Below, in pieces: positions 788 through 52,400 of a stretch of 64,000 nucleotides of DNA. Made by a program: the position numbers and the translations under genes. Source of the stretch: Nageia nagi (Eukaryota > Plantae > Pinophyta). The stretch lies in the NCBI GenBank assembly GCA_050084985.1, contig JBITNC010000001.1, forward strand, positions 138,322,001 to 138,386,000. Reading direction: 5' to 3'. The notes under the pieces were generated by a model. It did not search any database, was not told the DNA's origin, and saw only the letters and a list, made by a program, of their open reading frames with translations. Positions within the stretch are counted from its first letter, which is position 1. Each line of letters opens with the position of its first letter.

Positions 788-3700
788 ATGCCATCATTAG
801 ATTATAAAGATCCTAAGTTCTATAAATTAAATGGGGAGGGAGATCCTAGGAGACATTTGCAAGGGTTTAAAGATGAGTGTGAGCTCAAAATCAATGTGGA
901 TTCAAGATTAGAGGCAAAGTTCTTTCCTCATAGTTTGGAAGGCGAGGCTCGTGAATGGTTCTATTCTTTACCCAAAAGGTTAGTTACATAATTTTGAGAA
1001 TTGAGAAACTTATTTCTAGAATAGTATAAGCATAAAATCAAGCACAAAGTCATGGTTTCAGATCTATGTGCTATGAGGCAAAGTAGTAATGAAAATCTTG
1101 AAAAGTTTGTCATGCAATTCAAAAAGACATGGCAACAAATCAAAACTAAGGTCATAGAAAAAGAGATAAATAATATCTTCAAGGATGTTATCATATTATC
1201 CTTACAATATTATGTTATTGATTATAGATATCTAGCATTTTTTGATATGACATATAAGCTATTGGAAAAAAAGAAAAAGTCCTTATGAAATTAGGGCTTG
1301 TGAAATATCGAAATGATGACAAGCCTGGGGCCAAGGATAAGTAGCCATAATCACCAAAAAAGGATAAATATATTCATGTAGCAAAAAAAGTGAATGAAAA
1401 GAAAGAAAAGAAATTCATTAAGTTTCCTATACCTCCCAAGTTTATCTTGAAAGATCTAATGGTAAAGGGACTATTACATCCTTTACCTAAGTGAGAGGAA
1501 GATGAGTTAGTAGAGAGGCCAAAATGGTACAAGGAAGATAGATACTATGAATATCATCAAACCAAGAGGCATGCCTCTAATGGGTCTGGAGGCCTAAGAA
1601 ATAAAATACAAAGGCTCATAGAGGATGGATTCTATGTGTGTCCTACTTAAGTTAAAGATATAGGGGAAGAGCAGCATATCAATGTAATTTTCCATGAAGA
1701 AGTGTGTGTAGCACTTACAACAGGAAGACCAAGAGTAGCAACAAATCCTGTTACATGTGAAAGGGAGCTCCCTAAGGACTCAAGAAGTTTTGACCTCATT
1801 AGCAACTCAAGAATACATAAGTAAAGGTTAGTTTGTTTGAATTGCTTCAAATTTTAGAACCTCATAGAGAAATGATGCATCAGATTTTTAAGAATAGTCA
1901 AATAGATAGGAACATCTCAATCACTACTTTTGCAAAAATGGTAGAAATATGGAGTAAAGGAGATGCTATCACATTTCACCCTAGTGAAAGGCCTAGCAAG
2001 GATGTAACCCAATTACATCCACCATTGTTTATTGAAGTGAATACCTTTGGCAATACAATTAAGAAATCATTGATAGATGGTGGGGTAGCTTTGAATATTA
2101 GCACCACTCACTTGCTTTCATAGTTTGATCCAAATTTATTACCTCCAAGAGAAGAGACTACCATGAGAGTTAAGGGGTTTGATGGTGTTCTAAAGAAATG
2201 TGCAAGAATAATCACACTTTCGATAAAAGTAGGAAAAAAGGTACTTCAAACCCTCTTCTACATTATAGATGTAAAACCTTCTTTTAATTTCATTCTTGGA
2301 AGACCTTGGATAGATGACATGGAAGGAATAGCATCCACTTTGCATAGATGTTTCAAGTTTTGTTTTGAAAGAAATGTTTACAAGGTAGAAGAAGATGAGA
2401 AGATAGCCAAGTAGTGCAATTATGTTATTCCTAAGATATTTGTTCTATATGATGCAAAAGATAAGGCTATCCTAGCTAAGAATGATTAGATCTATAGAAA
2501 AGTGTTACAGAGAATTAACATCAAGAATATCAAGTTTGGTTCATACACCATCACGGATGTCAATAACATCATTCTAAAGAGAGACTTGGATAGATGTTAG
2601 GAGGCTTAGGAAAAGGATTAATAATGCTCCTTTGATATCCATGAAGACTATTGACGGTCCTCTTTAAAGGAAATCATATTTAAAAACAAATGTTGCATCA
2701 TTCCATATCATGGAGATGGTCACAATGGTCAGGATAGTTTTTCAATATTAACACAAGAAGATAAATGGGTAAGAGATGATAAAAATTGCTTTATTATTGA
2801 ATGTGGAATAGATGATGAAGATGTAATACATGCTATAGACTTGTTTGAGAATGATGATGCTTTCTTATAATCTATCAGTACTAGAACCAAATATCCAGCT
2901 AGCATGAAAAGAGGACTCATAAATATTATCTAGATGTACATGCTTACTTTGGTGAATTTATGGAAGATAAAATCAAAGAGTTGAGAGAGTTTCCATTTCT
3001 CACACCATCAGAATCAAAGATGACTTGGTTGAATAAAGATGTAGAGGAGGTTAACATTGGTTCTCAAGAGACACTGTGACTCTTAAAAATAGGTAAGATC
3101 CTTGGGGAACCTTTGCAAAATGAGTTCATTAAATTTTTTCATGATTATTTTGAATTTTTTGCATGGTCATATAAAGTTATGCTTGGATTAGATGAAAATT
3201 TTGTGGTACATAAGTTGGTTTTTGAGAAAGGAGAAGTTCTTGTAAAGAAAAAATTAAGAAAGTTACATTTTCAAGTTTCTTTACTAGTTAAGAAGGAAAT
3301 TGAGAAACTATTGGAAGTTGGCTTCATTAGGCCCATTGATTATTTAAAATGGATGGCCAATGTAGTCTTAGTGAAAAATCCTATAGGTGAAATTAGAGTA
3401 TGTACTAATTTCAGAGATCTCAATAAATCATGTACAAAATATGATTTCCCATTACCTAACATAGATATGATCATTGACAATTTGGTAGGTTATGAGATGT
3501 TATCATTTATGGATGGATTTTTAGGATATAATCAAATCAAAATCAAGGAATGTGATCAGCATAAACAAGCACTTAGAACTTCTTGGGGCAAATTTTTCTA
3601 CAAGGTAATGCCATTTGTTCTTAAGAAGACAAGGACCACATATTAAAGAGCAATGATATCCATGTTTCATGACTTCATTCATAAAACAGTAGAGGTCTAT

Positions 3701-6407
3701 GTAGATGATATCTTGATAAAATCAAAGAATAAAGGAGACTATGTCAAGGATGTAAAAATAGCATTTGAAATTATGAAGTAGTACAAGTTATGAGTTAAGC
3801 TAAAAAATGTGTATTTGGGGTATCATCAAGAAAACTCTTGGGGCACATTGTCTCTAGGAAGGGGGTTGTGGTGGATCTAAAGAAGATTAAGGCTATCATA
3901 TAAAAGTCTCCTCCTACAAATCTCAAGCAATTGAGAAGCCTCCAAGGTAATATTAAAGCTATTAGAAGATTCATTTATCAAGTAATAGATAAGATAGCTC
4001 CTATGTCTCATTTACTTAAGAAAGAATTTGAGTTTAAATGGGATGTTAAGTGTCAAGAAGTGTTTGATAGAATAAAAGAGTATTTGCTACATCCACTGGT
4101 GTTAGCTCTATATAGACGTGGAGAACCTATTTGGCTCTATGTCTCGGCTATAGAACATGCATTTGGCATAATGTTGACAAAGAAGGAAGAATATGGTAAA
4201 GAAAGAGTAGTCTACTTTATTAGCAAAGCATTAAAAGAATATGAAACCAGATACACACCCATTGAAAAGTTATGTCAATGTATAGTGTTTGCTATTGAGA
4301 GGTTGAGGCATTATATGATCAATACCACAACATATATACTTACTCAAGCAGACCCGTTAAGATACCTAATGTCAAAACCATGCCTCAATGGAAGGTCAGC
4401 AAAATGGATCATGCTACTTTAGGAGTTTGATCTCAAGTTTATGAAACAAAAATCACTTAAAGGGCAGGTAGTTGCAAATTTTGTTATGGAGTTTCCCATA
4501 GAATATAGTACAAAAATAAAAGAAGAATATAAGAACAAATGTGCTTTGGTAGAAACCATAGAATGTATAGAAGAGGACCACCTATTACCTTCTTTTGAAC
4601 ATAACAAGACCACCAATGTTCCTTTTTTAGAGGTTTCAAAACCTTGAAAAATTTATTTTGATGGATCATGGTGTATGCAAGGGTTAGGTCTAGGAATAGC
4701 ATTGATATCACCTTAGAATGATGTTATTCCTATGTCATATAAACTATCATTTGAATGTACTAACAACATGTTAGAATATGAAACTCTCATATTAGGATTG
4801 AAAGCAAATATAGAGATTAGTGTTATGCATTTGGATATTTATAGGGATTCATAGTTGATAGTGAATCAAGTCAATGAGATATACAACACCAAGGATGAGA
4901 AACTTATTCCATATAAAGTCCTTGTTGCAAAAATCCTTGCTTACTTTGAAGAGTATCAATTAGAAAACATTCCAAGGAAAAATAATAGGTTAGCAGATGC
5001 AATGGCAAGTGTAGCTTCACTTATAGCAATTGAGATAGAAGGTAGGGAGACTACTTTCACTATAAAGAACTTGAGAACTCCATCAATTGCTAAGGAAGAA
5101 TTGAATATGGTTTGTGTTGCTCAAAAGGTTGGTTATGAGGTAAGTCCTTAGTACCAACACATATTCAAATATTTGAGTGATAACTTTATTGATGCTACAC
5201 TCGATAAGAGAGAATAGATTAGAATGAAAAGGCTTACTATGAAATATGTCATTATTGGTGATATACTTTATAAAGGATCACTTAATGGTATTCTTTTGAG
5301 ATGTCTTCATGATGAGGAGATTGGAACAACATTAGAACATGCTCATAGAGGGGCATGTGGAGGTCATTTCAATGGGAGATCAATTTATGGCAAGTTCATT
5401 AGGATGGGTTATTGGTGGCCCACCATGGAGCATGATTGTTATGATCATGTTAATAAGTGTGAATAATGTCAAAAGCATGCACACTTAGAATTAACACCTA
5501 CTTAAGAGTTGAACTATGTCACATCACCATGGCCTTTCTCAATGTGGGCTTTGGATTTCATGGGTGTTATCAATCCTTCATCTAGTGAGGGGCACAAGTT
5601 TATCTTGGTTTCCATTGAATACTACACTAAATAGGTTGAGGCAATTCCTTTTAAAATAGCTATACAAAAACATGTTATCAATTTCATCAAAGAATATATC
5701 ATTTGTAGATTTGGCATACCTTAAATGTTAATCATGGATAATAGTGCAAATTTTATAGGAAAATATATCAAAGAATTTTGTAAAAAGATGAAGGTTGAAC
5801 AGAGATTCTCTTCAGTTTAATTTCCCCAAGGAAATGGAAAAGCTGAAGCAACAAACAAAACAATCAAGAAAATATTAGCAAAAACTATCAAAAATAATGG
5901 TAGGGATTGGCATGATCAATTACCATATTCTCTATGGGCATATAGAATAAGTGAAAGAATAGCAATAGGTGATACTCCATACACTCTTGTGTATGGTGAT
6001 GAAGCAATCATTTCTCTTGAAATTGAGATCATTTCTTTGAGAATTTTACTCAAATATATCATGAAGGAACCACAATAATGGGAAGCATGGTTAAATCAGC
6101 TAGAGGTATTAGATGAGAAAAGAATTAATGCACTAGAGCATCTCAAAAAATATCAGCAAAGAATAAAGAGGGCCTATGGAAAGAAAATGGTACCCAAAGC
6201 ATTTGAAGTTAGGGATTTGGTTCTCCAAGAGAACGTTTCTAACACTACAGCAAAGAATGAACTTAAATGAAAGTTTGAGCCAAATTGGGTTGGCTCATAC
6301 ATCATTATAGAGGTTTTAGATAGAGTTACATATAGATTATCTACATTAGATGGGGAGGTTCCCAAAATCCCATCAATGTTAAGAACCTAAAGAAGTATCA
6401 CATCTAG
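788..6407 (+). pseudogene. gag-pol polyprotein of Tat element (many stops/frameshifts)
   Basis: Gag GEGDPRRHLQGF...FFPHSLEGEAREWFYSL; protease LIDGGVALNI...LGRPWI; RT FPLPNID...MDGFLGYNQI...YVDD; RNase H LYVSA...YTPIEK; integrase H-x6-H...C-x2-C, GNGKAE, WVGSY (GPY-like). Confidence 0.93.
4648..5020 (+). pseudogene. Additional (archaeal-type) RNase H domain between RH and INT
   Basis: IYFDGSW...FECTNNMLEYETLILGL...DS*LIVNQV...IPRKNNRLADAMAS; hallmark of Tat-lineage elements. Confidence 0.88.
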
Positions 6408-13600: not shown

Positions 13601-15549
13601 TGGTTTGTTGATTTTAATGACTTTATTTTCAAACATTTAAAAACACACGAAACACATATAAGATTTCTAGATATAAAAAAAATAAAAATAAAAATAAAAA
13701 AATAGGATTTTATAATAACTTTTAAAAATTTATATTTGGTAGTGAAAATCACTTTCCACATTCTCAAAATTGAATTATCACAATAATGTTGAGTTCACCA
13801 AATTAACTTAATATCCTAATGCACATAAAATAAATTATATTTATAAATTATAATAAATAAACAAGATGAAAATTAAATACTTAGTTTAATTATGGAATTA
13901 AAATTAGTTTTAGATGATATTCTTGTTAAGTCAAATTTTAAAGTTCATACAATAAGGAGACTTATCATATAAAGAGTAGATAATATTCTTGATCTGGTAA
14001 TCGTATTTAAGGAAAGATCTAAAGTATGTGAAGAATTTATCCCTATGGAGCAAACTATAAAAAATGAGATACCCTAAAAAGAATATGAACAACCACATAT
14101 ACAAAAAGGAAAATGTTGAAGAATGGATAATGGAAAGAGGTAAAATCCAAAAGGAGATTAGTAACACAATAGAATGAAGGCTTAGAAAAATATTCAAACT
14201 TAGAAAAATCATTGGTGAAAGGAATACAACACCTCAAAGGTGATTTTCAGATAACATGAAGTGCATAAAAGAAGATAGACATGGGAAAAAGATATGTTGG
14301 ACACCCTAATAAAGGAGAAACCAGAAAGAAAGGAACTACCAAGGAGTCTATGGACAAAAATTAGTCAACACTAGATGGTTTTGGAAGAGGGATCTCCTCA
14401 AAATTGGAAAGAAATAAGAATGTTGTGAAAGGTTGTTGATCTACATGCTATGGTTTCTATAGCAGATTCACTAAGGAAGATATCTTTCTAATTGAAAGTT
14501 AGATTGAATTTTGTAAAAAATTGATGTCTAACATTTCTTGGACAATGAAGTTAGAAGAACATCTTGATATTGCACAAAATAAACAATAGTAGGATGTTGC
14601 CAAAAAAGTTTCAAATTTGTAATAACAAGTTGGGTACTTGTATAAAAAACCCCTTTAAATTTACCCTTACCAAAAAAAAAACTTTTAAAGTTCATAACTT
14701 TTAAAATGTAGCACTATTTAACTATTTATAAATATTCATTAGAAATACATCTTAAGGAAGAATGCAATGGTGGACTCTTTTGTCATTTTATAAAATATAG
14801 GTACAAATTCAACTTATTTATATATACAAATTTAGTTTTTGGATCTGTAAATATAAATCCCTTTATGTACTATGAAAATACAAACTTATTTGATTTATAA
14901 ATATATAATAATGATCATTTTCTCCTAATTTATTTGACTAACTTATATTTTTATAATAGATTGCATATAACTTTGGGCTTTTTTCAAGGAGAATGTTAAC
15001 AAAAATAAATGACAAGGCCCTCTCAAGTTACAAGCCCTTGGTTCTATAAAACTTATAAACAAAAAATAATTATAAAAAGCAAGTGAAGTGTATGCAAAGT
15101 GTATGAGAATAACTTTGTCCATATGCTAAAAATGTAGATCAAGTCATAGGATTTTTTAAGAATACCAACTATAAGATTTTTCAATTGAGCTTCTCTCAAG
15201 ATTTTGATTTTTTTGTAAGAATTTAATTATTTTCAAATGACCAAATAATATTAGAGTGTTCATTTCTCACGTAATACAAATAGAATATATGTAATTAATC
15301 TTAAAAATACAAATGAACCTCACTGATTATGAATCTATTTAGAATGTTAAAAATTATCAACTCCTACATATTACTATAGACTTAATGAAGAGTACATTCC
15401 AACATACTTAATATACAACCTTAATAAAAAAAATGTTATGCATAAAAGATTTAAAAACTAAATTTAGAAATATTTCAAATCTAACTAAAATTACAACAAA
15501 ATTTTATATGATAAAGATATTAAAAATTATATATTAAAAAAGTGTATAA

Positions 15550-18681: not shown

Positions 18682-21600
18682 TATTGGAAAATGAGTTGAG
18701 TTTATTTCTATTAATGAAAATAGAGTTTAAATACAATGGAGTATGAGAGTTACATTCTTATAGAATAGCGGAATAGGAGAAACCCTAAATATTAACTATT
18801 AAACATTAGTAACAACACTAATGTATATATTATCTATTGATCTATTACGGATTCTAATGTATCTAATATTAATTTAATGTATTATTTCTAACATCTCCAT
18901 AATACATTAGGTATTTACAGGACACAAGAGGAAGCTTTGAAAGTATTCAAACTTTCCACTGACAAGAGATTTGGTGAAGACATTTGCAAATTGTACTTTT
19001 GTGAAAATGTAATGGAGTTGATTGTTGTGCAATGAAATATGGTCACAAATCAAATGCGCCCCTATCTAAATGTGTTTGGTGCACTCATGAAAATAGGATT
19101 GAAAACCATATTTTGTACATTTTGATTATCGTGGTGCAGAACTACAAGTTATTTTGTGGAATTCTAATGTTTGTGAAAATGCACCATAACCATACTGCTT
19201 CACAAACAACATCAACTGCAGATAGACTTGGATGTGATGCTCTTCTTCTTGCTACCCCATGAAACTGGTCTAGATCCGAGGAAGAACACATATCATGTCA
19301 TTGATCTCCTATCATCCAAGGATATCCTCTATAATTTTCATTCATGTATCTAATCAAGATGAACTTGTCTTTCTTCTTGTACTCTAAGCCATAACTATCA
19401 ATTCCACAGATGTATCTCAAAACATGCTTTGTAACAGTCTAGTGGGCCTTCTTTGGTTCATGCATGAATTGTGAAAGATAGCTAACAACATAGCAAATAT
19501 TAGGCCTAATGTAGGCTAGGTAAATTAACCCTTCAATCAATTGATGATAGTGAGTTGAATTTACCGATGGAGAACAATCATAGCATGACATATGTAAACC
19601 AAGTTCAATTGGTGTGGACATCTGTTGGAAATCTTTCATCCTGAATTTCTCCAACAAACTCTTGGTGTACTTCATCTATGAAATAAATATTGATCATGCA
19701 TCTTCCAATCCTCCAATCCAAGGCAATAGTGAAGTAAACCCAAGGCATTCATGTCAAATGCTCTCTTGAGGTCATCTTTGGTTTTTCTTAAGACAATTAA
19801 ATCATCAACATATACTATAACTATGAAAATCTCCCCCACCCCCCCCCCCCCCATGTTGTCAAAGGTAGAGGTTAGGATCATACAGACTCCTATTGAAGCC
19901 ATGTTGTAGTATATGGTCATAAAGGTTTGTATACTAGGCTCTTGGAGCCTGTTTCAAGCCATACAGAGACTTGATCAATCTACACACTTCTCATTTTCCT
20001 GGATCAATGACAAACCCTTCATGTTGTTGCACATAGACTTCTTCCTCTTAGTCTCCATTCCGGAAGGTGCTCTTCACATCCATCTAATGGGATTTCTAGC
20101 CAAATTATGTAGCCAATTCAAAAGAAACTCTAATGGTCTTCATCTTGGCAATGGGAGAAAAAGTCCTCATAGTCGATAGCTTCCTCTTGTGCATATCCTT
20201 TGGCAACTAGTTGAGCCTTGTGCTTGTCAAGTGTCCCATCAATTTGTACTTTTTTTGAACATCCATTTGCATGGCTGACTTTCAATGTGGTAACTCGATA
20301 GATTCATGAACTATTTCAAGTTTTGGTGTATTCACCACCGTGCTGATTAGTGTCAAATTCACTTCCTCACTAGCCATGCTTCATGTCCTTGGTCTGGAAG
20401 TAGAAGTGTCTGGTGGAGCACTCAAGTTTGAATCCTACTGTGTCTTATGGTACCATTTAGGTCTTTTGACATATCAAGTGGAAAATTTACAATTGGATCT
20501 TCTCTCTCATCATCCTTATCATCATAATTGATTATGGTACCATTGTTAGGTTCGGGTACTACTATAGGTCGATTAGTTCAAGATTCACCAATCTCATCAA
20601 AAATGACATCTTTTCTAATACATATCTTTCATATAGTAGTATCCATGAGTTTATATCCTTTAGAATCACCAAACTCAAGGATTTGTCATTCAATGTCTTT
20701 CTTTTCTTTTTGGGAATGTGCATATGGTCAATTCAACCAAATACTCGAAGATGGGAGATAGATGGTTTCATTCTTGTCCATGCTTGTTCAGATGTCATCC
20801 CATAAAAAGTTTTATAAGCTACTTTATTTAGCAGATATATTGCAGTGCTTACTACATCGACCCAAAAAATTTTGTCCATCTTTGCATCTTTCAACATACT
20901 TCTCACCATTTCAACTATGGTCCTAATTTTCCTTTCACAAACCCCATTTTGTTGTGGTGTGTAGGGTGTGGTCAATTATTGTCAAATTTCATGTTACTTC
21001 AAGAATGCAGAAAACTCATTTGATAAGTATTCTCCCCCTGAATATGAGTGGAGAACATGTATGTAATGACCAGTGGAATTCTCCACATGAGATTTGAATT
21101 CTTTGAAATAGTGAAAGGTTTTGTCCTTTGTTTTTAATAGGTACACCCATATTTATTGGAGTAATCATCAACAAACAAAAGGAAGTGTCTATGGCCAATG
21201 TTACTAGCACTCATGGGTCCGCATTGATCGATGTGAAGCACATCAAGAGGTTCTGTAGCATGATATGTGCTAGCCTCAAATGGAAGTTTGTGTTGTTTCT
21301 ATATGATGCAACTAGAACAAACATTAGTAGGAGAAGCAAGAGATAGGAGGCCACATACCATATCCTCCTTTTGCAAAGTGATTGGGTAATTTGGATTCAT
21401 ATTTCCAAATCATCAATGCCAAAGGGTAATGACATCCTCAACATGAACATTGAGTGCTTGATTGTTGGAAGCTACAACATAAATCAAAACCATATTACCA
21501 ACTCGTTGTGCTTTTCCTACAATTCGATAATCTTTGGATTTGTCTTTGATGAAGCATTCTTCCTTTCCATTGACAATGTCAAAATCCACCTTCAGATTGT

Positions 21601-21960
21601 TGTCTAACATTTGACTAATGGATAGGAGGTTCTTTATGATTCCTAGCACATACAATACCTCTTTGATCTGATAATTGTTCTTTCCAAGATGTACATGAAC
21701 ATCACCCTTTTCTTCTATGTCATGGGGTTTTTCGTCACCCAAATGTACTTGACCATGATGTGAGTTTTCATCCAAAGAAATAAACCAATCCTTTTGTCTA
21801 GTCATATGCTTGGAAGAACCGAAATCAACTTACCAAGTAGATGAATATGAGGATTTATCTTGATGAAGAAGAGCAAGATTGTCAAATTCATGAGTCTCTT
21901 CTTCAGTATCATTGAAAACATTTCCTTTTTATTATCTTCATGGAGCTATTTCTTGGGCAT
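18682..21960 (-). mobile_element. Decayed Ty1/copia retrotransposon (PR-INT-RT-RH plus short 3' LTR ~18682-18893); gag side truncated
   Basis: Protease region SKHMTRQKDWF...LLSISQM; integrase TTPYTPQQNGVCERKIRTIVEMVRSML; RT IVYVDDLIV, LIYLAYIRPNI; RH remnant near 18960-19300; copia domain order. Confidence 0.9.
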
Positions 21961-24784: not shown

Positions 24785-26405
24785 TATTTTTTTTGGTCAA
24801 AGGTAAATTTATATTAATATTGGTTTTTTATATAGGATCAAAAAACCTATTTTTACAAAATTTGAACTATGTTATCATTTAGTTTGTGTACATTTCATGT
24901 CCTACACTCCACTTCCACAATCACGAGTATTTACGATTACCACAATATTAAAATCTATTATGTTATTCTTTAGAAATATTTGCTAAATTTGAAAATGCAT
25001 TTCTACACTTCAGACTTCGCAAGTAGTACTTGTGTGTAACATCTCTAGAGTCTTCTATTACAGTTTTGTGTGTTGCCTCTAGGTTGTTCTGGATCATTGC
25101 CATTGCTTGTGGGGATCTTGAAGAAGTTGTCTTCACATTTCCCTTGGTTGTTTTGGAGCCTTGGCACCATCCATATTTGTTGCATCATTTTTGCTTATGA
25201 TCAATCAATGTTGTCCCTCAAGCTTACTAAGTGGCTGAGTTTGCATCAAACCCTTGTTTGGAGAGGATTCAGGGGATCCATTTATAGAGGCACCAAGAGG
25301 TGGGCTTTCACTTGATTTACTTTCCAAAATCAAATAATCTTTAGGTGCATCTGGCAAGGGATCTTCCACTTGATTATTGCTTGGAAAAATGTTCTCATCA
25401 AAGATTTGATTCAAAACCTGAGAGTTACCATTTCGCAGCCTTCATCATTTTCAGAATCAGACAAGTCTTTAACCATTAGGGAGGCTGAGATGGAAGAAAT
25501 TTGATGCTTGTTAGGTGGATTTGCAAGAGGAAAATGCCACTTTAAGTGCCCATATTGTTGACATCGATAGCATCTTAAGGAAATGTTTTCATATTCAATA
25601 CTTTGGTTCCAGATTCTCCATTTTGGTGTCAAAGTGATAGATTGACACCATGGTTTTGACAGTGGCATCCAAAAAGCAATGCGAGCCTTACATAGGTCTT
25701 ATTTTTTATCAGTATTTATTCTTGTCAAATCATCAGGATATAGGAATTTTCTAATTGCATTTCCTATTTTTGTGATGGATTTCCTACTCCCAAATTCAAC
25801 AGGGAGGGCATATAAATTTACCATCAATGGTATACCATCAATCTCCTCAGAGAGAGGATTGAAATCCACTAACCACTCTCAGATGTACAGATCCCTTTGT
25901 TCGAAGAAGTATAGTTGTCTACACTCAAGGATCCAATCCCTATCTTCCGCACTATCACAAATGGTCATGAAAAATTATAGGGAAGAAGGATAAACTAGCA
26001 TTTTAAACCCCATTCTTCTTTAGCTATTTTTGTCAGATCCTCCAGAAAAGGATGCTTTCCCCTCATCTTGTAGATGATGGCACGAGCTTTTAGTTCTTTT
26101 GGATCCATTCTTGCTTCGTCATTTGCAATATCAATCATAATAATGGCATCACCTTTAGCACACATTTGCAAGGATTCGAATGGATGCTTGCATCTTCTAT
26201 GATCACCCGACCTATTTTTCCCATGGTGCAAATCCACCGAGCACCTAGGGTTTGAGCTCCTGCTTTTGCCATCAAGATTCTTCAAAACCTTATCCTCTTG
26301 TTGGTTCTCCAAGCGTCTGCTATCCTCATGCCTCTCATTCTCGATGTGATTTTTCATAGGGCTTGCGATTCTATCACACAGCATTCGCTCTCAATTCATC
26401 ACATA
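24785..26405 (-). mobile_element. L1-clade LINE derivative encoding only ORF1 (decayed), poly(A) tail at ~24785-24794
   Basis: DUF4283-like ARAIIYKMRGKHPFLEDLTKIAKEEWGLK; zinc knuckle region WNQSIEYENISLRCYRCQQYGHLKWH; no endonuclease/RT between ORF1 and the A-tail. Confidence 0.78.
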
Positions 26406-26437
26406 AAATTTTTATTTTTTTTCTTGGGGATATTTTT

Positions 26438-35887: not shown

Positions 35888-37378
35888 GTAATCTGGATAT
35901 TATTATGGAGACAGCCTTCTTGTCAGTTGGAGTTTTTGTCACGTTATTACTAATCTTGTCAAAGTTTCCTCCTTTTCAATTTGTATTCATCTTTCTGCCT
36001 CATTTGATTCATTCATATTCTTCTCTCAGTTCCTCTTTCTTTCTTTTCTTTCTTGTTGAATTAATTTTTTTTAGCATAAATCAACTGATTTAGAATATCC
36101 AGATCTTCATTTGGTAGCCTCATTTCATGCACACGTCATGTATTATGGTACAGAAGAGTAGCCAAAAAATGTGTGACCTGATCTGGTATTGGTTTCAACT
36201 TCCTGAAAAATTTCATCAGAATCTAAACTACACAAAGCAACATTAGTATCTTAAAAAAATGTTTCATTTAATGCTTTGTTGTGTGTATAAGAATTTTCAT
36301 TTCCTTCTGTGCTATTGTAGTGGTATCTCAACTTGATCATGTCCAGGTGACCAATTTATTTTCTCGCATTGCATTTTTAGGCCCATAAGGACTCAAGTAA
36401 TTTGCATGTTTTTTGATGTTTGTTTCCAACTCCGGATAATAAAGGATAGGTATTGATGACATTACTCTCACTAGAGTTTTGACCTGTCGCTTGAATGGAT
36501 GCTGGCCTATCTAACAAATCATTTGAAGTCTATAAGTTTTATTATGTTTTTGTAAGCAGTAGCATTTAACACTTAAAGCAAATATTCATTTGTAAATGCA
36601 ACTCATTTACATATGTATGTGTAATTCATCAAAAAACATTCATTCAGTCTTTGTCACTGAATTAGAGAAATGGATTCAGGAAAAAGGAGAGTCTTCCATC
36701 TTAATAATTTTAGGTTTTTAACAAGGCTATCTTACTCTGATGTTCTTTATAGCATGGGCTAGTATGACTCTCATATTTGCATACACAACTTCTGTAATGT
36801 ATCAGTCCCTTGTTTCTCAAACCTCTAACACTGAAATTCAACTAAGATCCAATTACTTCACATCGTAGCAATTTGGAAGCAGTAGTTGCCCTGTTCAACT
36901 AACTGCAAATCTTTAGTCTATCCTATCCTTGGATTTATGATATTGGTATGGCTTCATCATTTCTTATATCAAATTATCTGAACTGCCTCAATTTGATTCT
37001 CCAATGCCTTTTAGTCCTAATATCTTCAAACCCTAAGTTATATATTTTTCAAATTTATTTTCTCAGCCATTGACTTGCTATCATTGAGTATCAACAAAAA
37101 AGAAAATGTGAATTTCAATAAGCATGGTTGAATTTTTAAAACCTGTTTCAGTTACATCTACCATTTTCTTTTCCACTATTTGTCTGTAGTTTGCCTAGTA
37201 CCCGATATCATCTCATCTTGCCTTTTTCAAAAAGGCCAATATTGGGAGCTTCAACTGTAGGTATAGAAACAAGTTTTGTTAATGTAACATCTCTCCAATA
37301 ACATTTAATAACTAGGGTTTTCAAATGGTCCACTTCTTGCTGAATCTTATGCACAAAAGATTTTATTGTAGCAGGATA

Positions 37379-39273
37379 TTTTTTTTTGGTTGGGATCAAA
37401 AAAAAGGCCACTTGTTAAATTAATGGAGTTTTTATACAGGTAACCAAAACCTGTTATTGTAAAATTGTAACAATATCGGCAACATCCTGCTATTGTTTAC
37501 TTCGTACAATTGCAGAATGTTCTTCCTTAAAGCTACATGAGAACCCAATACAGAGTTGGGCACCTATTTCGTACGGATTTCATACAAATATCAATTTTAA
37601 CCATGATTGATTTTGCTACAGAAACCATAGCGGGAGAAACAACTTTTACTTTTTTTTCCCTGTTTTAAGAGAAAACCTCTCCCCAAACTGTCAAGTGTTT
37701 TTTGTTTGCCTTCAGCAACTTCCTTGGTAGTTTCAATTTCTTTTGTCTCTCCTTTGCTTGGTCATCCCACATGCTGTTGACCTACATCTACTCTTTTTGA
37801 GGCACTCCATAGTATCCTTTGGCTGGTTTTGGGGATGTGTGTATCATCAGAGTCTAATTGGCTTTCCACAAGTGAACTTTGTAATCTGTTTTTGGGCTTT
37901 ACTTGTGTCCAACCCTCTATTCAGTATTTTTTGAGCTTGCATCTTTGGATCATTTTCTACGGTTTTCTCAATGGTAATCAAGTTATCATTTTCTTCTTAT
38001 TTTTCTCCAACTATGATCACCTCATGAGGAGTAGATTTAACATTATTGGATCCTTTTCCAATATTAGCATCTGTATTCGGGGCAGTCTTTGCCTTATCAG
38101 TATCAAAGATCCTATTGTTGTCCTCATCCACTGTAGCTTCCATCACCCTTTCTGTTTGATCAGAGATTTGCTTCCAAATCTAATTACCTTGTTGTTTTTT
38201 GTCTCCACAACCATCTGAGCAGGGCATGAGCTCAAGCTATGCCCAACTTGATTACATGTTAGGCATAAGCAATTATTTTTTTCAAACCAAAGTTCTTGCA
38301 TCCATTCCCCCAAATCTGATTCAATCATTACAATATATGGTAGTTTAGCTCCAAATTCTACCATAATGCAAATTCTTGCCTCGATGAGTCTTGTCCGAGC
38401 TTTTGTTACTTCATCAACTGTAATTAATTTTCCAAAGGAGCCTGTAATTCCTCCAAATACCTTCTGGTGCCAAAATTTGAAGGGGAGGTGAGGAAGGGTT
38501 ACCCAGATTGGAGCATTCATAATCTTGGCTTTGGACGAATTAAAACCTGGCTTCCATTTTTCCAGGAATAATACTTTCTTTCCATAAAACTAGGCTAGGC
38601 TCAAAATGTAATCTTGATCCTCTACATCATTAAAAACAAACATAATATAGTCATTGAGCATCGTAATTACCCCTAGAGATCCTTTAATTTTCCATCTTAG
38701 CTTCGCCCATTTTTTAATTGAATCTATATTTGGACAAGCACCATGTAGCCTACTAACAAGATTATATTTTTCCCTTTACGTAGATTGGTTGATGATAGCT
38801 TTTGTAACTTTCTGAAAAATCTTATCCCCCTTTTTTCCGCCTTTAGAGGGGGGTTGATGTCAACCATAGCCTCTTATGAGAAGAGACTACGCCATGATTT
38901 TCTAGAATCCTCCATAGATTCTTTCGACAAAGAATCAATTCCCTAGCAGCTCCATATGCATAGTACCAGTCTAGGACAGTAGCTAGAGAACATAATACCC
39001 TCCTCCTATGCAACCTTGAATGTATGTGCCTTAGCTATGAATCTAGAACTATAGCTTGCAGATCGCAAATGATGCTCAGATCCGATGCCTAGTCTGCTTG
39101 CCACTCGAGAACCAGTCCCTACTTGCAACTGACCCAGACCTTGCCTCCGCAGAGGGTCTCTGCCTGCAATCACTCCTCACTCACCTAAAATCAAGCCTAG
39201 CTTCACCCATCATAGCCTGTCGAGGGCAAGGCCCATGCCCCTGAGCCTTTTTGCTTGCCTGTTACTAGGTTGA
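37379..39273 (-). mobile_element. TSD-bounded L1-clade LINE derivative encoding only ORF1 (half-L1-like)
   Basis: TSD TGTAG(C/T)AGGATA(TTTTTT) at 37367-37378 and 39274-39285; A-tail 37379-37387; DUF4283-like region (WAKLRWKIKG...FVFNDVEDQDYIL...WKPGF...APIWVTLPHLP) and CX2CX4HX4C knuckle (CLTCNQVGHSLSSC); no ORF2. Confidence 0.88.
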
Positions 39274-39686
39274 TGTAGTAGGATATTTTTTATAGCAACT
39301 TATTAAGATGTGATTTTGTAAAAGCCTGTTCCATTCAAATTGTCAAGCATCTCAAAGTCTAGTGGAATGAAAATCAAATGCAAAGAGAAGTCAATGCATG
39401 AAGCCGCAAGGATGAGAGAAAAATCACCACTTACCTACCGTAATCTGTAGACAAGCAGGGCAACAGTTGCATAGTTTTGAATTTATGGAATTGTATGTAG
39501 AGAATATTTTCAACTACAACATAGGAAAGACTTTGTAGATTTCAGTTCCTTGGTCTCATTTGTTAGGTTAACAACTTATTGGGATGTTTTTCCTTCCTCT
39601 TACAAACTACCATCGAAGACGAAAAAATAGTTAGGCATCCAAAGATCTAAGTGAGGTAGTTGTTATCTATCCCGGCTCGAAAGGAC

Positions 39687-46417: not shown

Positions 46418-49400
46418 ATGAATAGATTAAGAGATAATAAAGGGAGATTTGTTAGTAGTAAAGGAGAAGGTAGTAAGAAAGTAGTTGTAGGAAAACCATA
46501 GAAAACACAAAAATCAGTACCACAAAAAACCCCCCAAAAATAAAAAGTTGGATTCAGGAAAGATTGTGGAAGAACAAGGAAGTAGTATAGTTGTTGAAGA
46601 ACATCAGGTGGAGCAACCAGAAGAAACTAGGCCAAAGCCTAGACTTGTGGAAGAAATTGAGCCAACAAGTGCAGAAGAGGAGTTAGATCATAGTCCAGAA
46701 CGTGAACATCCAGAAATTGCAGAAGAAACAACTTTCATTAGTCCATCCTTACCACCATTTCTGAGATTTTCAGATCCACCTAAACAATATAGGAGATTTA
46801 CAGATACATCTCCTTTAGCACCTATACGGTTTGCAGAATTAACTCTTCAGCCAAATTTAGTTGAGTCTGCTCCGGATACAGTCACTCCCACCCCAACATC
46901 TCATCCATTCATCCATTCCTTTGATAAACCTTCACCATTATCCATTAGTCAACTTCTTTCTAGTGAAAGTGATTCTGAAGCTGAGAAGGAGGCAGCCAAG
47001 AAACCCTTCCATATTCACTACCGCAAAGGTAGTATACCAGAGTTGGATCATATTAGGAGTATATATATCAATCCGTTGGTAAATATGTCTGGAGGAAGTG
47101 GTGGTTCTAGAGTAGGGGGTACTCCTCAAACTTCAACCCAAACTTTCACTTATCCCATTCGGCTTGCTGCTGGAACTCAGGCTCCTATGAAAAATATTTC
47201 ACCATCAATCTTACCTATTTCCAGAGGTCTTTCTAGTGAAGATCCAGATCAGTTCTTGTTTGAGTTCAAAATATTGTGCAAAACTTATGACTATGAAATG
47301 GATGAACAGAAATTAAAACTCTTTCCATCCACTCTGAAGGACAATGCAATGAGGTGGTTCATGGGACTACCTCCAGATTCTATCTCTACTTGGCAAGAAA
47401 TGGAAAGAGCCTTTTTAGAAAAATATCAAGAGTATTGTCGAGTTAAAGATAGGAAGGATGAACTGTTTCGGCTCACACAGGCAGCCTCAAAAAGCGTTGA
47501 AGATTACCTTGACAAATTCCTATTTGTTCAGAAGAGAGTGGGTACAACCATGGATCCAGAATTCTCCAAGACCATCTTTTTAAGAGGGCTTCTAGATTCC
47601 ACATTGGAAGTCATCAATCTGATGGGAAAAGGTAATGTCAATAAGTTAACTGTTGATGAAATTGTGGAACTCTGCAGAAACTATTCAAGGACCAGATCAT
47701 AGAAGAGAAGCGACAAGTTTCAGAATGATGGTTGAATGGAGATTGGATTGGCAAGTGAAATCAAAGAGGAATTTGCTAACTTCAGGGCTGATGTTCTGTT
47801 TGAACTAAGTCAACTAAAGGGGATAGCAAACAAGTTGAAAGAAATGCAGGATTCTTTCCAAAGCACAAATTCGAAGAAGGAAGCCACTGATGAATTCTCA
47901 TCAAGATACTGTCCTAGATGCTGGAAGAAACATGCTTTACATGAATGTCCTTTGAACACCACCCATATATGCATCCTGTGCAATAATGACCATCCAACAG
48001 ATGATTTTGACTATCTAACGATAGCACAAATGTCTGTAGTAGCTCCAAACATGAACATGAACTATATGGGAGCAATGGGGCCTAGGGGAAATAATAATTT
48101 TCAAGGAAACCCAAATCCTTATTTTTCTAGGCCAACAAATCCGAATTGGTGGAACATGCCACACAATTCCCCATGGATGGCAAACCCATATTGGCAAGTA
48201 TATGGATGGGATTCTCCACAATGGAATCCACAATGGTAGCAATATGGAGGACAGAATCGGCAGAACTGGAATAATCAAGGACAGCGAAGGCAAGGTTTGC
48301 GCCACCACCTATTAATCAACAACAACCAATGAATCAGCAGCAACAACCTCTGAAGCAACCAGCTCTTCCTGCCCAACCTGTTCCCAACCCCAATAATAAC
48401 AGGCAAGCTCCAGCGCCTACCTATAAGATTGATCAAGGAGACACAGCATCAGTAAATGTTATTCAATGCAATGAAATCGAGCTACGATCTGGTAAGAAAT
48501 TGCCAGATCCTACACCTCCTATTATCACAGAAGTAGAGGTGGATAGCTCAGATGAATCTCCAGTAGAGCAAACCGAGGATAGTCTAGAGCCACCAACAGA
48601 TACAATTGCACCTACACATAATAAGGAGGTCCAGACAGCAGTTAGTCCATATCCAGAGAGACTAATGGAAAAACCTCAAGAAACAAAATCAGAACTACTG
48701 CAAGAGATGAGGAAATTGAATATCACTATACCTTTATTACAAGCAATCAAACAGGTTCCTGAGCTAAACAAGATGATTAAAGAATTATGCATGCACAGGA
48801 GAGGAAGAAGAAAGAAAGTCTATCCAAAGACTATTAAAGTAGATGGTAAAGTAGCTGATCTTTTGGCCGAAAATTGGTAATTCCTAAGTATGGTGATCCG
48901 GGAAATCCTGTCATTACCATTAACATAGGGACCACTAAAGTGCCTAATGTTTTAGTTGATTTGGGAGCAACAATAAATGTCATGACTCTAGACATGTCTC
49001 AAAAACTATTTTTGTCAAATATACAGCCCACTTCAACTATGTTACAAATGGTAGACTGAACAGTAGCTAAGCCGGAAGGAATTGTAGAAGATGTCCAAAT
49101 AATAGTAGATTCTTGGAGCTATCCAGTGGATTTTCTGCTGTTAAAGACAAGAGCACAGCCTTCTGGATATCCAGTCATACTGGATAGACCTTGGTTAGCC
49201 ACAGCAACTGCATACATCAACTGTAGGTCCGGGGACATGACTATTTCTAATGTCCTAAACACAAAGACACTTTCTTTGTACCCACCTGCCCAACCAACAT
49301 TGGATTATCACAATCAGGTATGGATCGACGAGCCTAACATGGATGCACATGACACTTTTGCAACATTAGCAACCATCACCATCAAGGACCATGTCGAGGA

Positions 49401-52400
49401 GATAGAAGAAGATCCTAGTCTGGAATAGATACAGTATTACTGTCCGCAGCAACAGGAAGGAGAATCAGAGGGCAGTGATGAGGAAAGGGGAGATACAGTG
49501 GTCGAACCATTACAAAGCATTATTTTTAATGTTCCTTTAGAAGAACAAGTAGCCTTGTTGGCAATGTTCAAATGTCCTCTTACTCACATTGTTCTAAAAG
49601 GGGATAGTTTTAGGGAAAGAACAAGGGTATTCCATTCCTTATTCCCACACTCTTGTCCTTTGAATTCCCTAGTTCAGCTTCTAGAATAGAGTAATCTGAC
49701 CAAGCCTAGGATTAAGACTGTTGAAGTATTACCAGGAAAGACTCTTAATATCAGCAGTTGGCTGATGGATGAACAAGAGAAGAAGCTTTTTGATGTCTTG
49801 ACCACTCACATCGAAGCTTTTGCTTGGGATTACTCAGACATGAAAGGAATTCATCCTCAAATATGTACCCATCATATTTATATGAATGAAACAAGGCTTG
49901 TCCAGCAGCCTCCTAGACGAATAAATCCTGCACTTAAAGCAGTTGTTAAGACTGAAATTGGGAAGCTGTTGAAGGCTGAATTCATCTATCCTATCTTAGA
50001 TAGTCAATGGGTCTCACCTTTGGTGATTGTGCCTTAGAAAAATGGCAAATGGAGGGTATGTGTTGACTACAGAGCTCTCAATAAAGCCACATTCAGGGAC
50101 CACTTTCCATTGCCTTTCATTGATCAGGTGTTAGACACTCTGTCTGGTAAATAGTATTTCTCTTTTTTAGATGGATTCAGTGGCTATAACCAAATACAAA
50201 TTGCAGAAGAAGATCAGGGCAAGACTACATTTACCTGTGCATGGGGTACATATGCTTACAAGGTTCTTCCTTTTGGCTTGTGCAATGCACTAGCAACCTT
50301 CCAAAGAGCTGTGCTAGCAATCTTCTCAGATCTGACTAATGATTGTGTTGAAGTGTACATGGATGACTTCACAGTGTATGGCAACACTTTTGAAGATGCC
50401 TTAAGGAACTTAGAAAAAGTATTGGTGAGATGCAAACTGCATAATCTATCCTTAAGCCATGAAAAATGTTTCATGCTTGTACAGGAGGGAATAGTCTTGG
50501 GCCATCATATTTCAGCCCAAGGGATTCAGGTGGACCCCAAGAAGATAGAAGTCATAAAACAACTTCCTCAACCTGAGACTCAAACAGATATCCAGAGCTT
50601 CTTGGGACATGCCGGATACTATAGAAGATTTATAGAAAATTTCAGTAAAATAGCAGCCCCATTATTTGCCCTGCTGCATAAGGACAATGAATTTGAATGG
50701 ACGGTTGACTGTGAAGAAGCTTTTCAGACCATCAAAGAAAAACTCACCACAACTCCTATGTTGAGAGGTCCAAATTGGGAACTTCCATTCCACATTCATA
50801 CGGATGCCTCAAATTATGCTATTGGAGCAGTCCTAGGACAAGAAGAACCAAGTAAGTCCCCATATGCTATTTATTACATAAGCAAAAACTTGGTAGGAGC
50901 TAAAAGAAATTATACTACTACAGAAAAAGAATTCCTAGTAGTAGTGTATGCCATCAATAAATTTAGACACCATATCATAGGGTACCAAGTGTTTGTTCAT
51001 ACTGACCATGCTACCATTAAATATCTCATGAACAAACCTATGGTAAGTGGAAGAATCGTGAGATGGTTGCTGTTATTACAGGAGTTTAATGTGACTATAA
51101 TTGATAAACCTGGCAAGACAAATGTAGTAGCAGATTTCTTGTCTAGACTGAACATCATTCGAGAAGATGAGCTTGTGGAGGATACTTTTCCAGATGAACA
51201 ACTATTTGCAATCTCTACACAATCCCCATGGTTTGCAGACATTGCTAATTATCTTGCCACTGGAAGAATTCCTCCATATCTGTCTCCAAATCAGAGGAAA
51301 CAACTGATAAAGCAGAGTGCATCATACAAATGGGTGGATGGATTATTGTTTAAATATGGACTTGATTATGCACTCCGAAGGTGTCTACGGACAGATGAGG
51401 TATTTGATGTTATCCATGCATGTCATGATGAGCCGTCATGAGGTCACTATTCTGATAAACGAACCATTCATAAAGTCCTAGGAACTAGTTATTTTTGGCC
51501 TTCCATGCACAAAGACATTAGGAAATATGTGAAGCAATGTGACCAGTGTCAACGAATGGGTAGACCAACTGCTACTACTCAAATGCCATTACAACCATAG
51601 TGGATGCTTGAACCATTTGAGCAATGGGGCATCAACTTTGTTGGACCTATTAATCCTCCATCTCAAGGTAAGAGACACATACTAGTCTGTACTGATTATG
51701 CCACTAAGTGGGTGGAAGTAGTAGCTTTGGCACATGCCAAAGAAGAATTGGTGGCAGATTTTCTGTATAATAACATTATGCAGAGATTTGGAGCTCCTCG
51801 GTTTCTGGTTTCTGATCAGGGTCCGCAGTTCATGTCAAGGACAATACAACATTTTGTAAACCAATATCAGATCTGACATAAGAAGGCTTCGCCCTATCAC
51901 CCACAAACAAATGGACAAGTTGAAGTTACTAACAGAGAGCTGGAAAATATATTGACCAAGACAGTAGCTTCGCACAGAAAGGATTGGGTATCTAGGCTTC
52001 CTGAAGCAGTTTGGGCATACAATACCATGTGGAAATCCACCAGTGGATTTACTCCATATGAATTGGTTTTTGGTAAGAAGCCTCTAATGCCAATAGAATT
52101 TGAGCTCCAAACACTGAGAACAGCCCTAGAAGTTGGGATGGACATAACAGAAGTTCAAAAAATAGACTGCTCCAGTTAAATGAGCTGGATGAAATAAGAA
52201 TGGAGGCATTGCATAATACTGAAATCATCCAACATCAACGGAAACTTTGGCATGACAAAAATCTTAAACAGAATCAGTTTCAGGTAGGGGAATGGGCTCT
52301 ATTATTTGATTCCCGATATAATGATTTCATAGGGAAGCTCCAGACACGATGGTTGGGGCCATATAAGATTCTTCAAATATTCCCTAATGGTTCAGTCCAT

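What the first reader, a model, noticed from the sequence alone, without database searches (positions are those of the whole stretch)
37367..39291. TSD-bounded ORF1-only LINE: a plant 'half-L1' (HAL1-like) non-autonomous retrotransposon
Seen: a 1.9-kb minus-strand element between 12-18 bp direct repeats (TGTAG[C/T]AGGATATTTTTT). It contains a GC-richer 5' leader, an L1-type ORF1 (DUF4283-like plus CCHC knuckle plus K/E-rich tail), ~300 bp of 3' UTR and an A-tail, with no endonuclease or RT. Known: ordinary L1 truncation removes the 5' end (ORF1) and keeps ORF2, the opposite of this. ORF1-only HAL1 elements are established in mammals; I do not know of a described equivalent in this kind of plant genome. 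Inference: it retrotransposed as an ORF1-only unit using ORF2p in trans.
Basis: partly seen in the sequence, partly recalled or inferred. Interest (0 to 1): 0.82.

Follow-up and report, generated by a model that had tools for sequence, protein, structure and literature searches.

The report
Decayed ORF1-only plant L1 retroposon
This is a dead 1.9-kb jumping-gene copy in a conifer-like genome that carries only the RNA-binding first gene of a plant L1 element and no copying enzyme, so complete L1 elements most likely copied it, as happens with mammalian HAL1.

Summary
Window 37367-39291 (minus strand) is one unit between a 17/18 direct repeat. That repeat has no other match in the window (expected 0.01).

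Layout, 5' to 3':
- a 406-nt leader, with 53% G+C over its first ~230 nt;
- a decayed ~420-codon ORF1 with DUF4283 (E 1e-16), an intact CX2CX4HX4C knuckle and a coding-like K/E-rich tail;
- a ~210-nt 3'UTR;
- a short A-run.

No endonuclease, RT, zf-RVT or RNase H signal was found by Pfam or tblastn.

Three other sequences bear on it:
- A 5'-truncated relative (13950-14682) has its own perfect 14-bp TSD and shares the last ~650 nt. This argues against a private deletion.
- A metagenome relative (L001) shares the ORF1 core. Substitutions are biased to third codon positions (pN/pS 0.33).
- A second, divergent ORF1-only element (24785-26425) has the same layout.

The best reading is an L1-derived, ORF1-only retroposon mobilised in trans, that is, HAL1-like.

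The scan has already reported this kind of element elsewhere in this genome (s1-846259, s1-859496). I found no paper describing one in plants.

The parts
39274..39291 (-). 5' copy of the target-site duplication. On the element strand it reads AAAAAATATCCTACTACA.
   Evidence: 17/18 identical to 37367-37384. These are the only two matches in the window; 0.01 expected.
38868..39273 (-). 5' leader (5'UTR), 406 nt, G+C-richer at its start.
   Evidence: G+C is 53% at element positions 19-250, against 37% in the ORF. No tRNA or Rfam match. Promoter function is inferred, not shown.
38874..38915 (-). Conserved 13-codon upstream ORF plus its TAA stop. It ends 6 nt before the ORF1 ATG.
   Evidence: The same short ORF, with the TAA at the same position, is present in metagenome relative L001.
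37597..38867 (-). Decayed ORF1, about 420 codons plus the stop. It has at least 4 in-frame stops and about 3 frameshifts.
   Evidence: Frame map. Long stop-free runs exceed shuffles in the core (p 0.008) and the tail (p 0.009), but not in the leader or 3'UTR.
38365..38733 (-). DUF4283 domain, the marker domain of plant L1 ORF1. Its N-terminal half is RRM-like.
   Evidence: Pfam E 1e-16 and 0.0037. phmmer finds 5875 relatives. A model of relative P0002 matches RRM domains at Z up to 9.1, rmsd 2-3 A over 70-83 residues. Literature: PMC5203782, PMC11288735.
38224..38271 (-). CCHC zinc knuckle, CX2CX4HX4C, preceded by one extra cysteine.
   Evidence: Read directly from the translation. It aligns with the knuckles of relatives. 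Pfam zf-CCHC_4 reaches only E 0.15.
37600..38145 (-). K/E-rich C-terminal tail of ORF1.
   Evidence: Four stop-free runs of 49-60 codons on a purine-rich strand, p 0.009 against shuffles. No Pfam domain.
37388..37596 (-). 3'UTR, about 210 nt. It holds a small hairpin (37436-37454) followed by TATAAAAAC (37428-37436).
   Evidence: No coding signal. The module aligns in el1, copy3 and el2 with two compensatory stem changes. Predicted folding energy is no better than shuffles.
37379..37387 (-). A9 run at the 3' end. Six of the A also belong to the TSD.
   Evidence: Sequence.
37367..37384 (-). 3' copy of the target-site duplication.
   Evidence: The implied bottom-strand nick is TTTTTT/AT, which is L1-endonuclease-like. 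That comparison rests on my own knowledge of the TTTT/AA consensus.
13950..14682 (+). copy3: an independent, 5'-truncated relative that shares the tail and 3'UTR. It ends in A10 and has its own TSD at 13936-13949 and 14683-14696.
   Evidence: nhmmer aligns el1 1258-1911 with 13983-14678, E 1.9e-36. Smith-Waterman z is 13-19 for el1 1537-1913. The 14-bp TSD is perfect, with 0.16 expected. No Pfam domain.
24785..26425 (-). el2: a second, divergent ORF1-only element with the same layout.
   Evidence: DUF4283 E 1.6e-7 and zf-CCHC E 0.005. ORF1 is about 25% identical to el1. No EN or RT hit. Its TSD is low-complexity.

Best explanation
el1 is a decayed copy of an L1-derived, ORF1-only non-autonomous retroposon.

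Proposed mechanism:
1. A source copy was transcribed from its leader. This step is inferred.
2. The transcript was polyadenylated about 40 nt after a hairpin + UAUAAAAA module. This step is inferred.
3. It encoded only a type-I ORF1 protein, with an RRM-like DUF4283 domain, a CCHC knuckle and a K/E-rich tail. The sequence shows this.
4. The RNA was reverse-transcribed into a T-rich/A nick by the endonuclease/RT of a complete L1 acting in trans. I infer this from the 12-18 bp TSD, the A-run and the absence of any ORF2.

The lineage was long-lived. el1 and the independent 5'-truncated insertion copy3 differ by 23-40%, yet their own TSDs are 94-100% intact. They therefore came from different, already diverged source copies.

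ORF1 was under purifying selection while the lineages of el1 and L001 diverged.
For: - TSD: 17/18 identical, unique in the window.
- ORF1 identity: DUF4283 E 1e-16 plus a CX2CX4HX4C knuckle.
- Link to L1: the same domain is fused to Exo_endo_phos/RVT_1/zf-RVT in relatives P0079 and P0141. tblastn with them hits only the ORF1 part, E 1.7e-19.
- No ORF2: no EN, RT, zf-RVT or RNase H in 16 stop-free pieces of el1 (every one of at least 29 aa downstream of the knuckle) or in 4 pieces of copy3.
- Coding continuity: the coding-like signal continues to element position 1692.
- Second insertion: copy3 has its own perfect TSD and is colinear with el1 1258-1911, E 1.9e-36.
- L001: it has 1040 nt after the knuckle with no EN or RT hit.
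- Selection on ORF1: pN/pS is 0.33 in frame against 0.92 and 0.81 out of frame. Mismatches by codon position are 52/38/84.
- el2 repeats the architecture.
- Fold: RRM-like in a relative's model.
Against: - copy3 starts downstream of the knuckle, so no second copy in hand spans the ORF1 core through to the 3'UTR.
- The homology of copy3 to el1 1227-1537 is weak by Smith-Waterman (z 3.2 and 0.1). nhmmer does join that stretch into a single alignment.
- L001 stops aligning at el1 1239, close to where copy3 begins at about 1225. This coincidence could mark a chimeric junction.
- The A-tail is short.
- No autonomous partner and no copy census could be examined.
- Full-length L1s might share this exact ORF1.
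- The 3' hairpin is no more stable than shuffled sequence.
Confidence: 0.65

Rival explanations
1. By-product of full-length L1s. L1 RNAs are prematurely polyadenylated at a signal just after ORF1, and these ORF1-only RNAs are then retroposed. Every copy is made afresh from complete L1s, so there are no ORF1-only source elements.
For: The UAUAAAAA-type motif lies 20-45 nt before the A-run in el1, copy3 and el2, and it looks like a plant poly(A) signal. No ORF1-only copy with an intact ORF was seen here.
Against: The ~210 nt after the ORF1 stop show no endonuclease N-terminus in any frame. Two families whose ORF1s are only about 25% identical share the 3' module. This is not decisive.
Confidence: 0.15
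2. Processed pseudogene of a host DUF4283-CCHC gene, possibly a domesticated ORF1, copied by L1 like any other mRNA.
For: Standalone gene models of 182-309 aa exist in Cryptomeria japonica. Purifying selection on the protein fits a host gene equally well.
Against: Several diverged lineages each left retrocopies (el1, copy3, L001, el2). A 3' module is conserved across families. DUF4283 is the usual ORF1 domain of plant L1 (PMC5203782).
Confidence: 0.1
3. A full-length L1 insertion that later lost ORF2 through a private internal deletion.
For: No second copy in hand spans element positions 1147-1258 together with the ORF1 core.
Against: The coding-like signal is continuous across positions 1147-1692. 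copy3 is an independent insertion and is colinear from 1258 to the end. No ORF2 trace remains. el2 shows the same layout.
Confidence: 0.06
4. One-off chimera. The RT switched template from a copy3-like RNA to an L1 ORF1 RNA near element position 1240.
For: Homology to L001 ends at el1 1239 and copy3 begins at about 1225.
Against: Synonymous sites between el1 and L001 are saturated (pS 0.64), so only the constrained core can align. The stop-free coding signal runs across the putative junction. copy3's first part is K/E-rich like an ORF1 tail.
Confidence: 0.04

Closest known systems
HAL1 ('half-L1') of mammals (Bao & Jurka 2010, as cited in PMC5786205)
   Same: It derives from the L1 clade, keeps ORF1, lacks ORF2, carries TPRT hallmarks, and must use L1 ORF2p in trans.
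   Different: The ORF1 is the plant type I kind (DUF4283/RRM-like plus CCHC), not the mammalian Transposase_22 type. The host is a gymnosperm-like plant. Copy number and partner are unknown here. A conserved 3' hairpin/UAUAAAAA module and an upstream ORF are present.
HeT-A (Jockey clade, Drosophila) and Ag-Sponge (CR1 clade, Anopheles): ORF1-present non-autonomous LINEs (PMC5786205)
   Same: They have the same strategy: a LINE derivative that encodes only the ORF1/gag-like protein.
   Different: They belong to other LINE clades and occur in animals. HeT-A is telomere-specialised.
Autonomous plant L1, e.g. Celine of poplar (PMC11288735)
   Same: Its ORF1 carries DUF4283. Its UTR sizes are comparable (635 and 189 nt, against 406 and ~210 nt here). 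It has a poly(A) end and a TSD.
   Different: Celine has a 3765-bp ORF2 with EN and RT. el1 has none.
Standalone DUF4283-CCHC gene models of Cryptomeria japonica (XP_059074866.1 and others)
   Same: They are the closest named relatives, at 37-40% identity for the ones I checked (P0002, P0011, P0014; P0018 is 35%). Among them, P0002 shows the same domain order with a K/E/D-rich tail and no ORF2 in the model.
   Different: They may be ORF1s of full L1s, ORF1-only elements, or genes.

Membership tests
Plant L1 ORF1 (type I) | DUF4283 domain | tested here: met
   Pfam E 1e-16 (profile positions 51-124) and E 0.0037 (positions 1-44), on the two pieces either side of a stop.
Plant L1 ORF1 (type I) | CCHC zinc knuckle after the domain | tested here: met
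   CX2CX4HX4C is read at window 38224-38271 and aligns with relatives' knuckles. Pfam zf-CCHC_4 is only E 0.15, below its cut-off.
Plant L1 ORF1 (type I) | The same protein type is physically linked to L1 EN/RT in relatives | tested here: met
   P0079 is DUF4283 + Exo_endo_phos + RVT_1. P0141 is DUF4283 + RVT_1 + zf-RVT. Both hit the el1 ORF1 by tblastn.
Plant L1 ORF1 (type I) | RRM-type RNA-binding fold | tested here: met
   Tested on relative P0002, not on el1 itself. The model has pLDDT above 88 for residues 1-80. VIA-align gives Z up to 9.1 against RRM domains, and nearly all of the top 50 are RRMs. Foldseek's top hits are tandem-RRM proteins.
Autonomous L1 LINE | Apurinic-type endonuclease (Exo_endo_phos) | tested here: not met
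   No hit at E up to 1 in the pieces scanned, and none by tblastn.
Autonomous L1 LINE | Reverse transcriptase (RVT_1), with or without zf-RVT/RNase H | tested here: not met
   Same searches. The window's only RTs are of LTR type, at 3.1-4.4 kb and 50.3-51.4 kb.
HAL1-like ORF1-only non-autonomous LINE | ORF1 present and ORF2 absent inside one TSD-bounded unit | tested here: met
HAL1-like ORF1-only non-autonomous LINE | TPRT hallmarks: TSD, A-rich 3' end, T-rich/A nick site | tested here: met
   The TSD is 12-18 bp, the A-run is 3-9 nt, and the nick context is TTTTTT/AT. The tail is short.
HAL1-like ORF1-only non-autonomous LINE | Several independent insertions share the ORF1-to-3'UTR structure | tested here: inconclusive
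   copy3 has its own TSD and shares el1 1258-1911, but it is truncated before the ORF1 core. L001 has no ORF2 within 1 kb after the knuckle. el2 has the same layout. No genome census was possible.
HAL1-like ORF1-only non-autonomous LINE | ORF1 kept by selection | tested here: met
   NG86 dN/dS is 0.19 (bootstrap 0.09-0.31) over 205 codons against L001. The frame control gives pN/pS 0.33 in frame and 0.92 and 0.81 out of frame. Whether the selected ancestors were ORF1-only is unknown.
HAL1-like ORF1-only non-autonomous LINE | An autonomous L1 partner in the same genome | not testable with these tools
Unchecked scan notes mention full-length L1s.
Processed pseudogene of a host gene | An intron-containing parent gene | not testable with these tools
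   There is no access to the genome or its annotation.

The most novel reading that the evidence does not exclude
Gymnosperm genomes may harbour an old, self-sustaining lineage of protein-coding parasites of L1. These would be ORF1-only elements with their own leader, a conserved upstream ORF and a conserved 3' hairpin/poly(A) module. Their RRM+CCHC protein would be kept by selection because it packages their own RNA for capture by L1 ORF2p. Such elements would also be the source of many of the standalone DUF4283-CCHC 'genes' annotated in plants.
Probability: 0.35. Interest if true: 0.6.

Novelty: new member of a known kind. Interest (0 to 1): 0.45.

Why it matters
ORF1-only LINE derivatives are described in animals: HAL1, HeT-A and Ag-Sponge (PMC5786205). 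I found no description of one in plants in the library I could search.

A plant counterpart would have three consequences:
- It would show that L1 ORF2p in seed plants mobilises coding RNAs in trans.
- It would offer an origin for the many orphan DUF4283-CCHC gene models.
- It would improve repeat annotation of very large conifer genomes.

The finding is solid but incremental. It is the same strategy and the same LINE clade, in a new host and with a different ORF1 type.

Tried and rejected
- tRNA or Pol III head, as other notes in this genome suggest: ARAGORN and Rfam found nothing in 36.0-40.5 kb.
- Residual ORF2: none by Pfam or tblastn.
- Metagenome scan with a 22-mer from the 3'UTR: no hit.
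- Protein-based metagenome scan: one locus, L001.
- Viral contigs: none.
- Codon-position bias in the tail between el1 and copy3: not significant.
- Protein similarity of the tail pieces to 150 relatives: none significant.
- 3' hairpin stability: no better than shuffles.
- L001 beyond its position 1319: not alignable to el1.
- Literature searches for a plant HAL1-like element: nothing found. Bao & Jurka 2010 is not held.
- The search for homologous proteins: not used. The protein family was already clear and the search is costly.
Full report
**Observation**

On the minus strand, window 37367-39291 is bounded by an 18-nt direct repeat with one mismatch. With up to two mismatches the repeat occurs only at these two places in 64 kb, against 0.01 expected from shuffles. 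I number the element so that position p equals 39292 minus the window coordinate.

Reading from the 5' end:
- TSD, positions 1-18.
- Leader, positions 19-424. G+C is 53% over positions 19-250, against 35% for the window.
- A 13-codon upstream ORF, positions 377-418.
- An ATG at position 425 opens a decayed reading frame that can be followed to a TAA at 1693. It has about three frameshifts and at least four in-frame stops.
- About 210 nt of non-coding sequence.
- An A9 run, six of whose A also belong to the repeat.
- The second TSD copy.

**What the ORF is**

- Two pieces either side of one stop match DUF4283, at E 1e-16 and E 0.0037, covering profile positions 1-124.
- The knuckle reads CX2CX4HX4C and aligns with those of relatives. 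Pfam zf-CCHC_4 reaches only E 0.15.
- phmmer against 1.84 billion representatives gives 5875 relatives. The closest named ones are standalone Cryptomeria japonica models at 35-40% identity.
- Longer relatives fuse the same domain to Exo_endo_phos, RVT_1 and zf-RVT.
- DUF4283 with zf-CCHC_4 is the usual ORF1 signature of plant L1 (PMC5203782; Celine, PMC11288735).
- An AlphaFold model of relative P0002 has pLDDT above 88 over residues 1-80. That N-terminal part matches RRM domains at Z up to 9.1, rmsd 2-3 A over 70-83 residues. Foldseek's top hits are tandem-RRM proteins.

The protein is therefore a type-I, RRM plus knuckle, L1 ORF1p.

**No ORF2**

- I scanned sixteen stop-free pieces of el1 (at least 29 aa), covering everything of that size downstream of the knuckle, and four pieces of copy3. 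None matches an endonuclease, RT, zf-RVT or RNase H at E up to 1.
- tblastn with three fused L1 proteins hits only the ORF1 parts of el1 and el2, anywhere in the window.
- The only RTs nearby are of LTR type.
- The tail after the knuckle (positions 1147-1692) has more codons in long stop-free runs than shuffles (p 0.009). The core is similar (p 0.008). The leader and the 3'UTR do not differ from shuffles.

ORF1 therefore most likely ran to position 1692, about 420 codons, which is ordinary for plant L1.

**Relatives**

*copy3 (window 13950-14682, plus strand).* It ends in A10 and is flanked by a perfect 14-bp TSD that occurs only there.
- nhmmer aligns it in one piece with el1 1258-1911, E 1.9e-36.
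- Smith-Waterman with shuffles is very strong for el1 1537-1913 (z 13-19). Upstream it is colinear but weak (z 3.2 and 0.1).
- It is an independent, 5'-truncated insertion, and it carries the same tail-to-3'UTR continuity. A private deletion in el1 across that stretch is therefore excluded.
- el1 and copy3 differ by 23-40%, yet their own TSDs are 94-100% intact. They therefore came from source copies that had already diverged.

*L001 (a 2187-nt metagenome contig).* It aligns with el1 369-1239, E 8.7e-100.
- It has 1040 nt after the knuckle with no EN or RT hit.
- Over 189-205 codons, mismatches fall 52/38/84 by codon position. pN/pS is 0.33 in frame and 0.92 and 0.81 out of frame. NG86 dN/dS is 0.19.
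- ORF1 was thus under purifying selection while these lineages diverged.

*el2 (window 24785-26425, minus strand).* It has DUF4283 (E 1.6e-7), a knuckle, no EN or RT, and an A-rich end. Its ORF1 is only about 25% identical to that of el1.

*Shared 3' module.* All three window elements share a small hairpin followed by TATAAAAA, 20-45 nt before the A-run. Two stem positions change on both sides. The hairpin is thermodynamically unremarkable. The motif may simply be a poly(A) signal.

**A caveat**

The alignment with L001 ends at el1 1239, and copy3 begins at about 1225. This could mark a chimeric junction. I think it does not, for two reasons:
- Synonymous sites between el1 and L001 are saturated (pS 0.64), so only the constrained core can align.
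- The coding-like signal crosses that point.

No copy in hand spans it together with the ORF1 core, however.

**Mechanism**

Shown here:
- a single TSD-bounded unit;
- an L1-type ORF1 with no ORF2;
- an independent sibling insertion;
- selection on ORF1.

Inferred:
- transcription from the leader;
- polyadenylation after the 3' module;
- reverse transcription by ORF2p of a complete L1 at a TTTTTT/AT nick.

Rivals, which the genome-wide searches I could not run would separate:
- retroposed products of prematurely polyadenylated full-length L1 RNA (0.15);
- retrocopies of a host DUF4283 gene (0.10);
- a private deletion (0.06);
- a one-off template-switch chimera (0.04).

**Comparison and novelty**

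ORF1-present non-autonomous LINEs are a known kind: HAL1, HeT-A and Ag-Sponge (PMC5786205). The element works like HAL1 and comes from the same clade. It differs in ORF1 type and host.

Six literature searches found no plant example. The library lacks most subscription journals as well as Repbase and Dfam.

Other agents of this scan have already reported ORF1-only half-L1s elsewhere in this genome. I treated those notes as leads only.

**Limits**

The DNA context of the protein relatives, the copy census and the autonomous partner could therefore not be examined.

Noticed in passing
window 38874-38915 (-) and L001 about 461-505: A short upstream ORF, M(M)E[DE][SP]R[KR]SW[RH]SLFS followed by a stop, is conserved at protein level. 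The TAA is at the same position, 6-9 nt before the ORF1 ATG, in two copies only 72% identical. It may be a translational control element.
   Followed up: partly
window 13977-14028 and L001:1865-1913: A 53-nt island, 79% identical (0 of 500 shuffles reach its score), links the 5' part of copy3 to a place in L001 about 500 nt further downstream than colinearity with el1 predicts. Unexplained. L001 may carry an insertion or a rearranged tail.
   Followed up: partly
window 37829-38218 (+): A 129-codon antisense ORF lies opposite the ORF1 tail. It is probably a by-product of the purine-rich sense strand and not a gene. This was not tested.
   Followed up: no
window 37428-37454, 14627-14651, 24828-24851: The hairpin plus TATAAAAA module is shared by the 3'UTRs of el1, copy3 and el2, with two compensatory stem changes. 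Folding energy is not significant. It could be a poly(A) signal or an RT recognition element.
   Followed up: partly
window 3113-4419, 21416-21805, 46548-51438: The surroundings are LTR-retrotransposon debris: Ty3/gypsy gag and RT-RNase H, and a copia-type Pol_BBD. No LINE RT occurs anywhere in the window.
   Followed up: partly
window 37612-37641 (el1), about 14440-14470 (copy3), 25160-25184 (el2): A short YG[FW]C-like motif lies near the end of the ORF1 tail in el1 and el2, and is partly kept in copy3. It may be chance.
   Followed up: no
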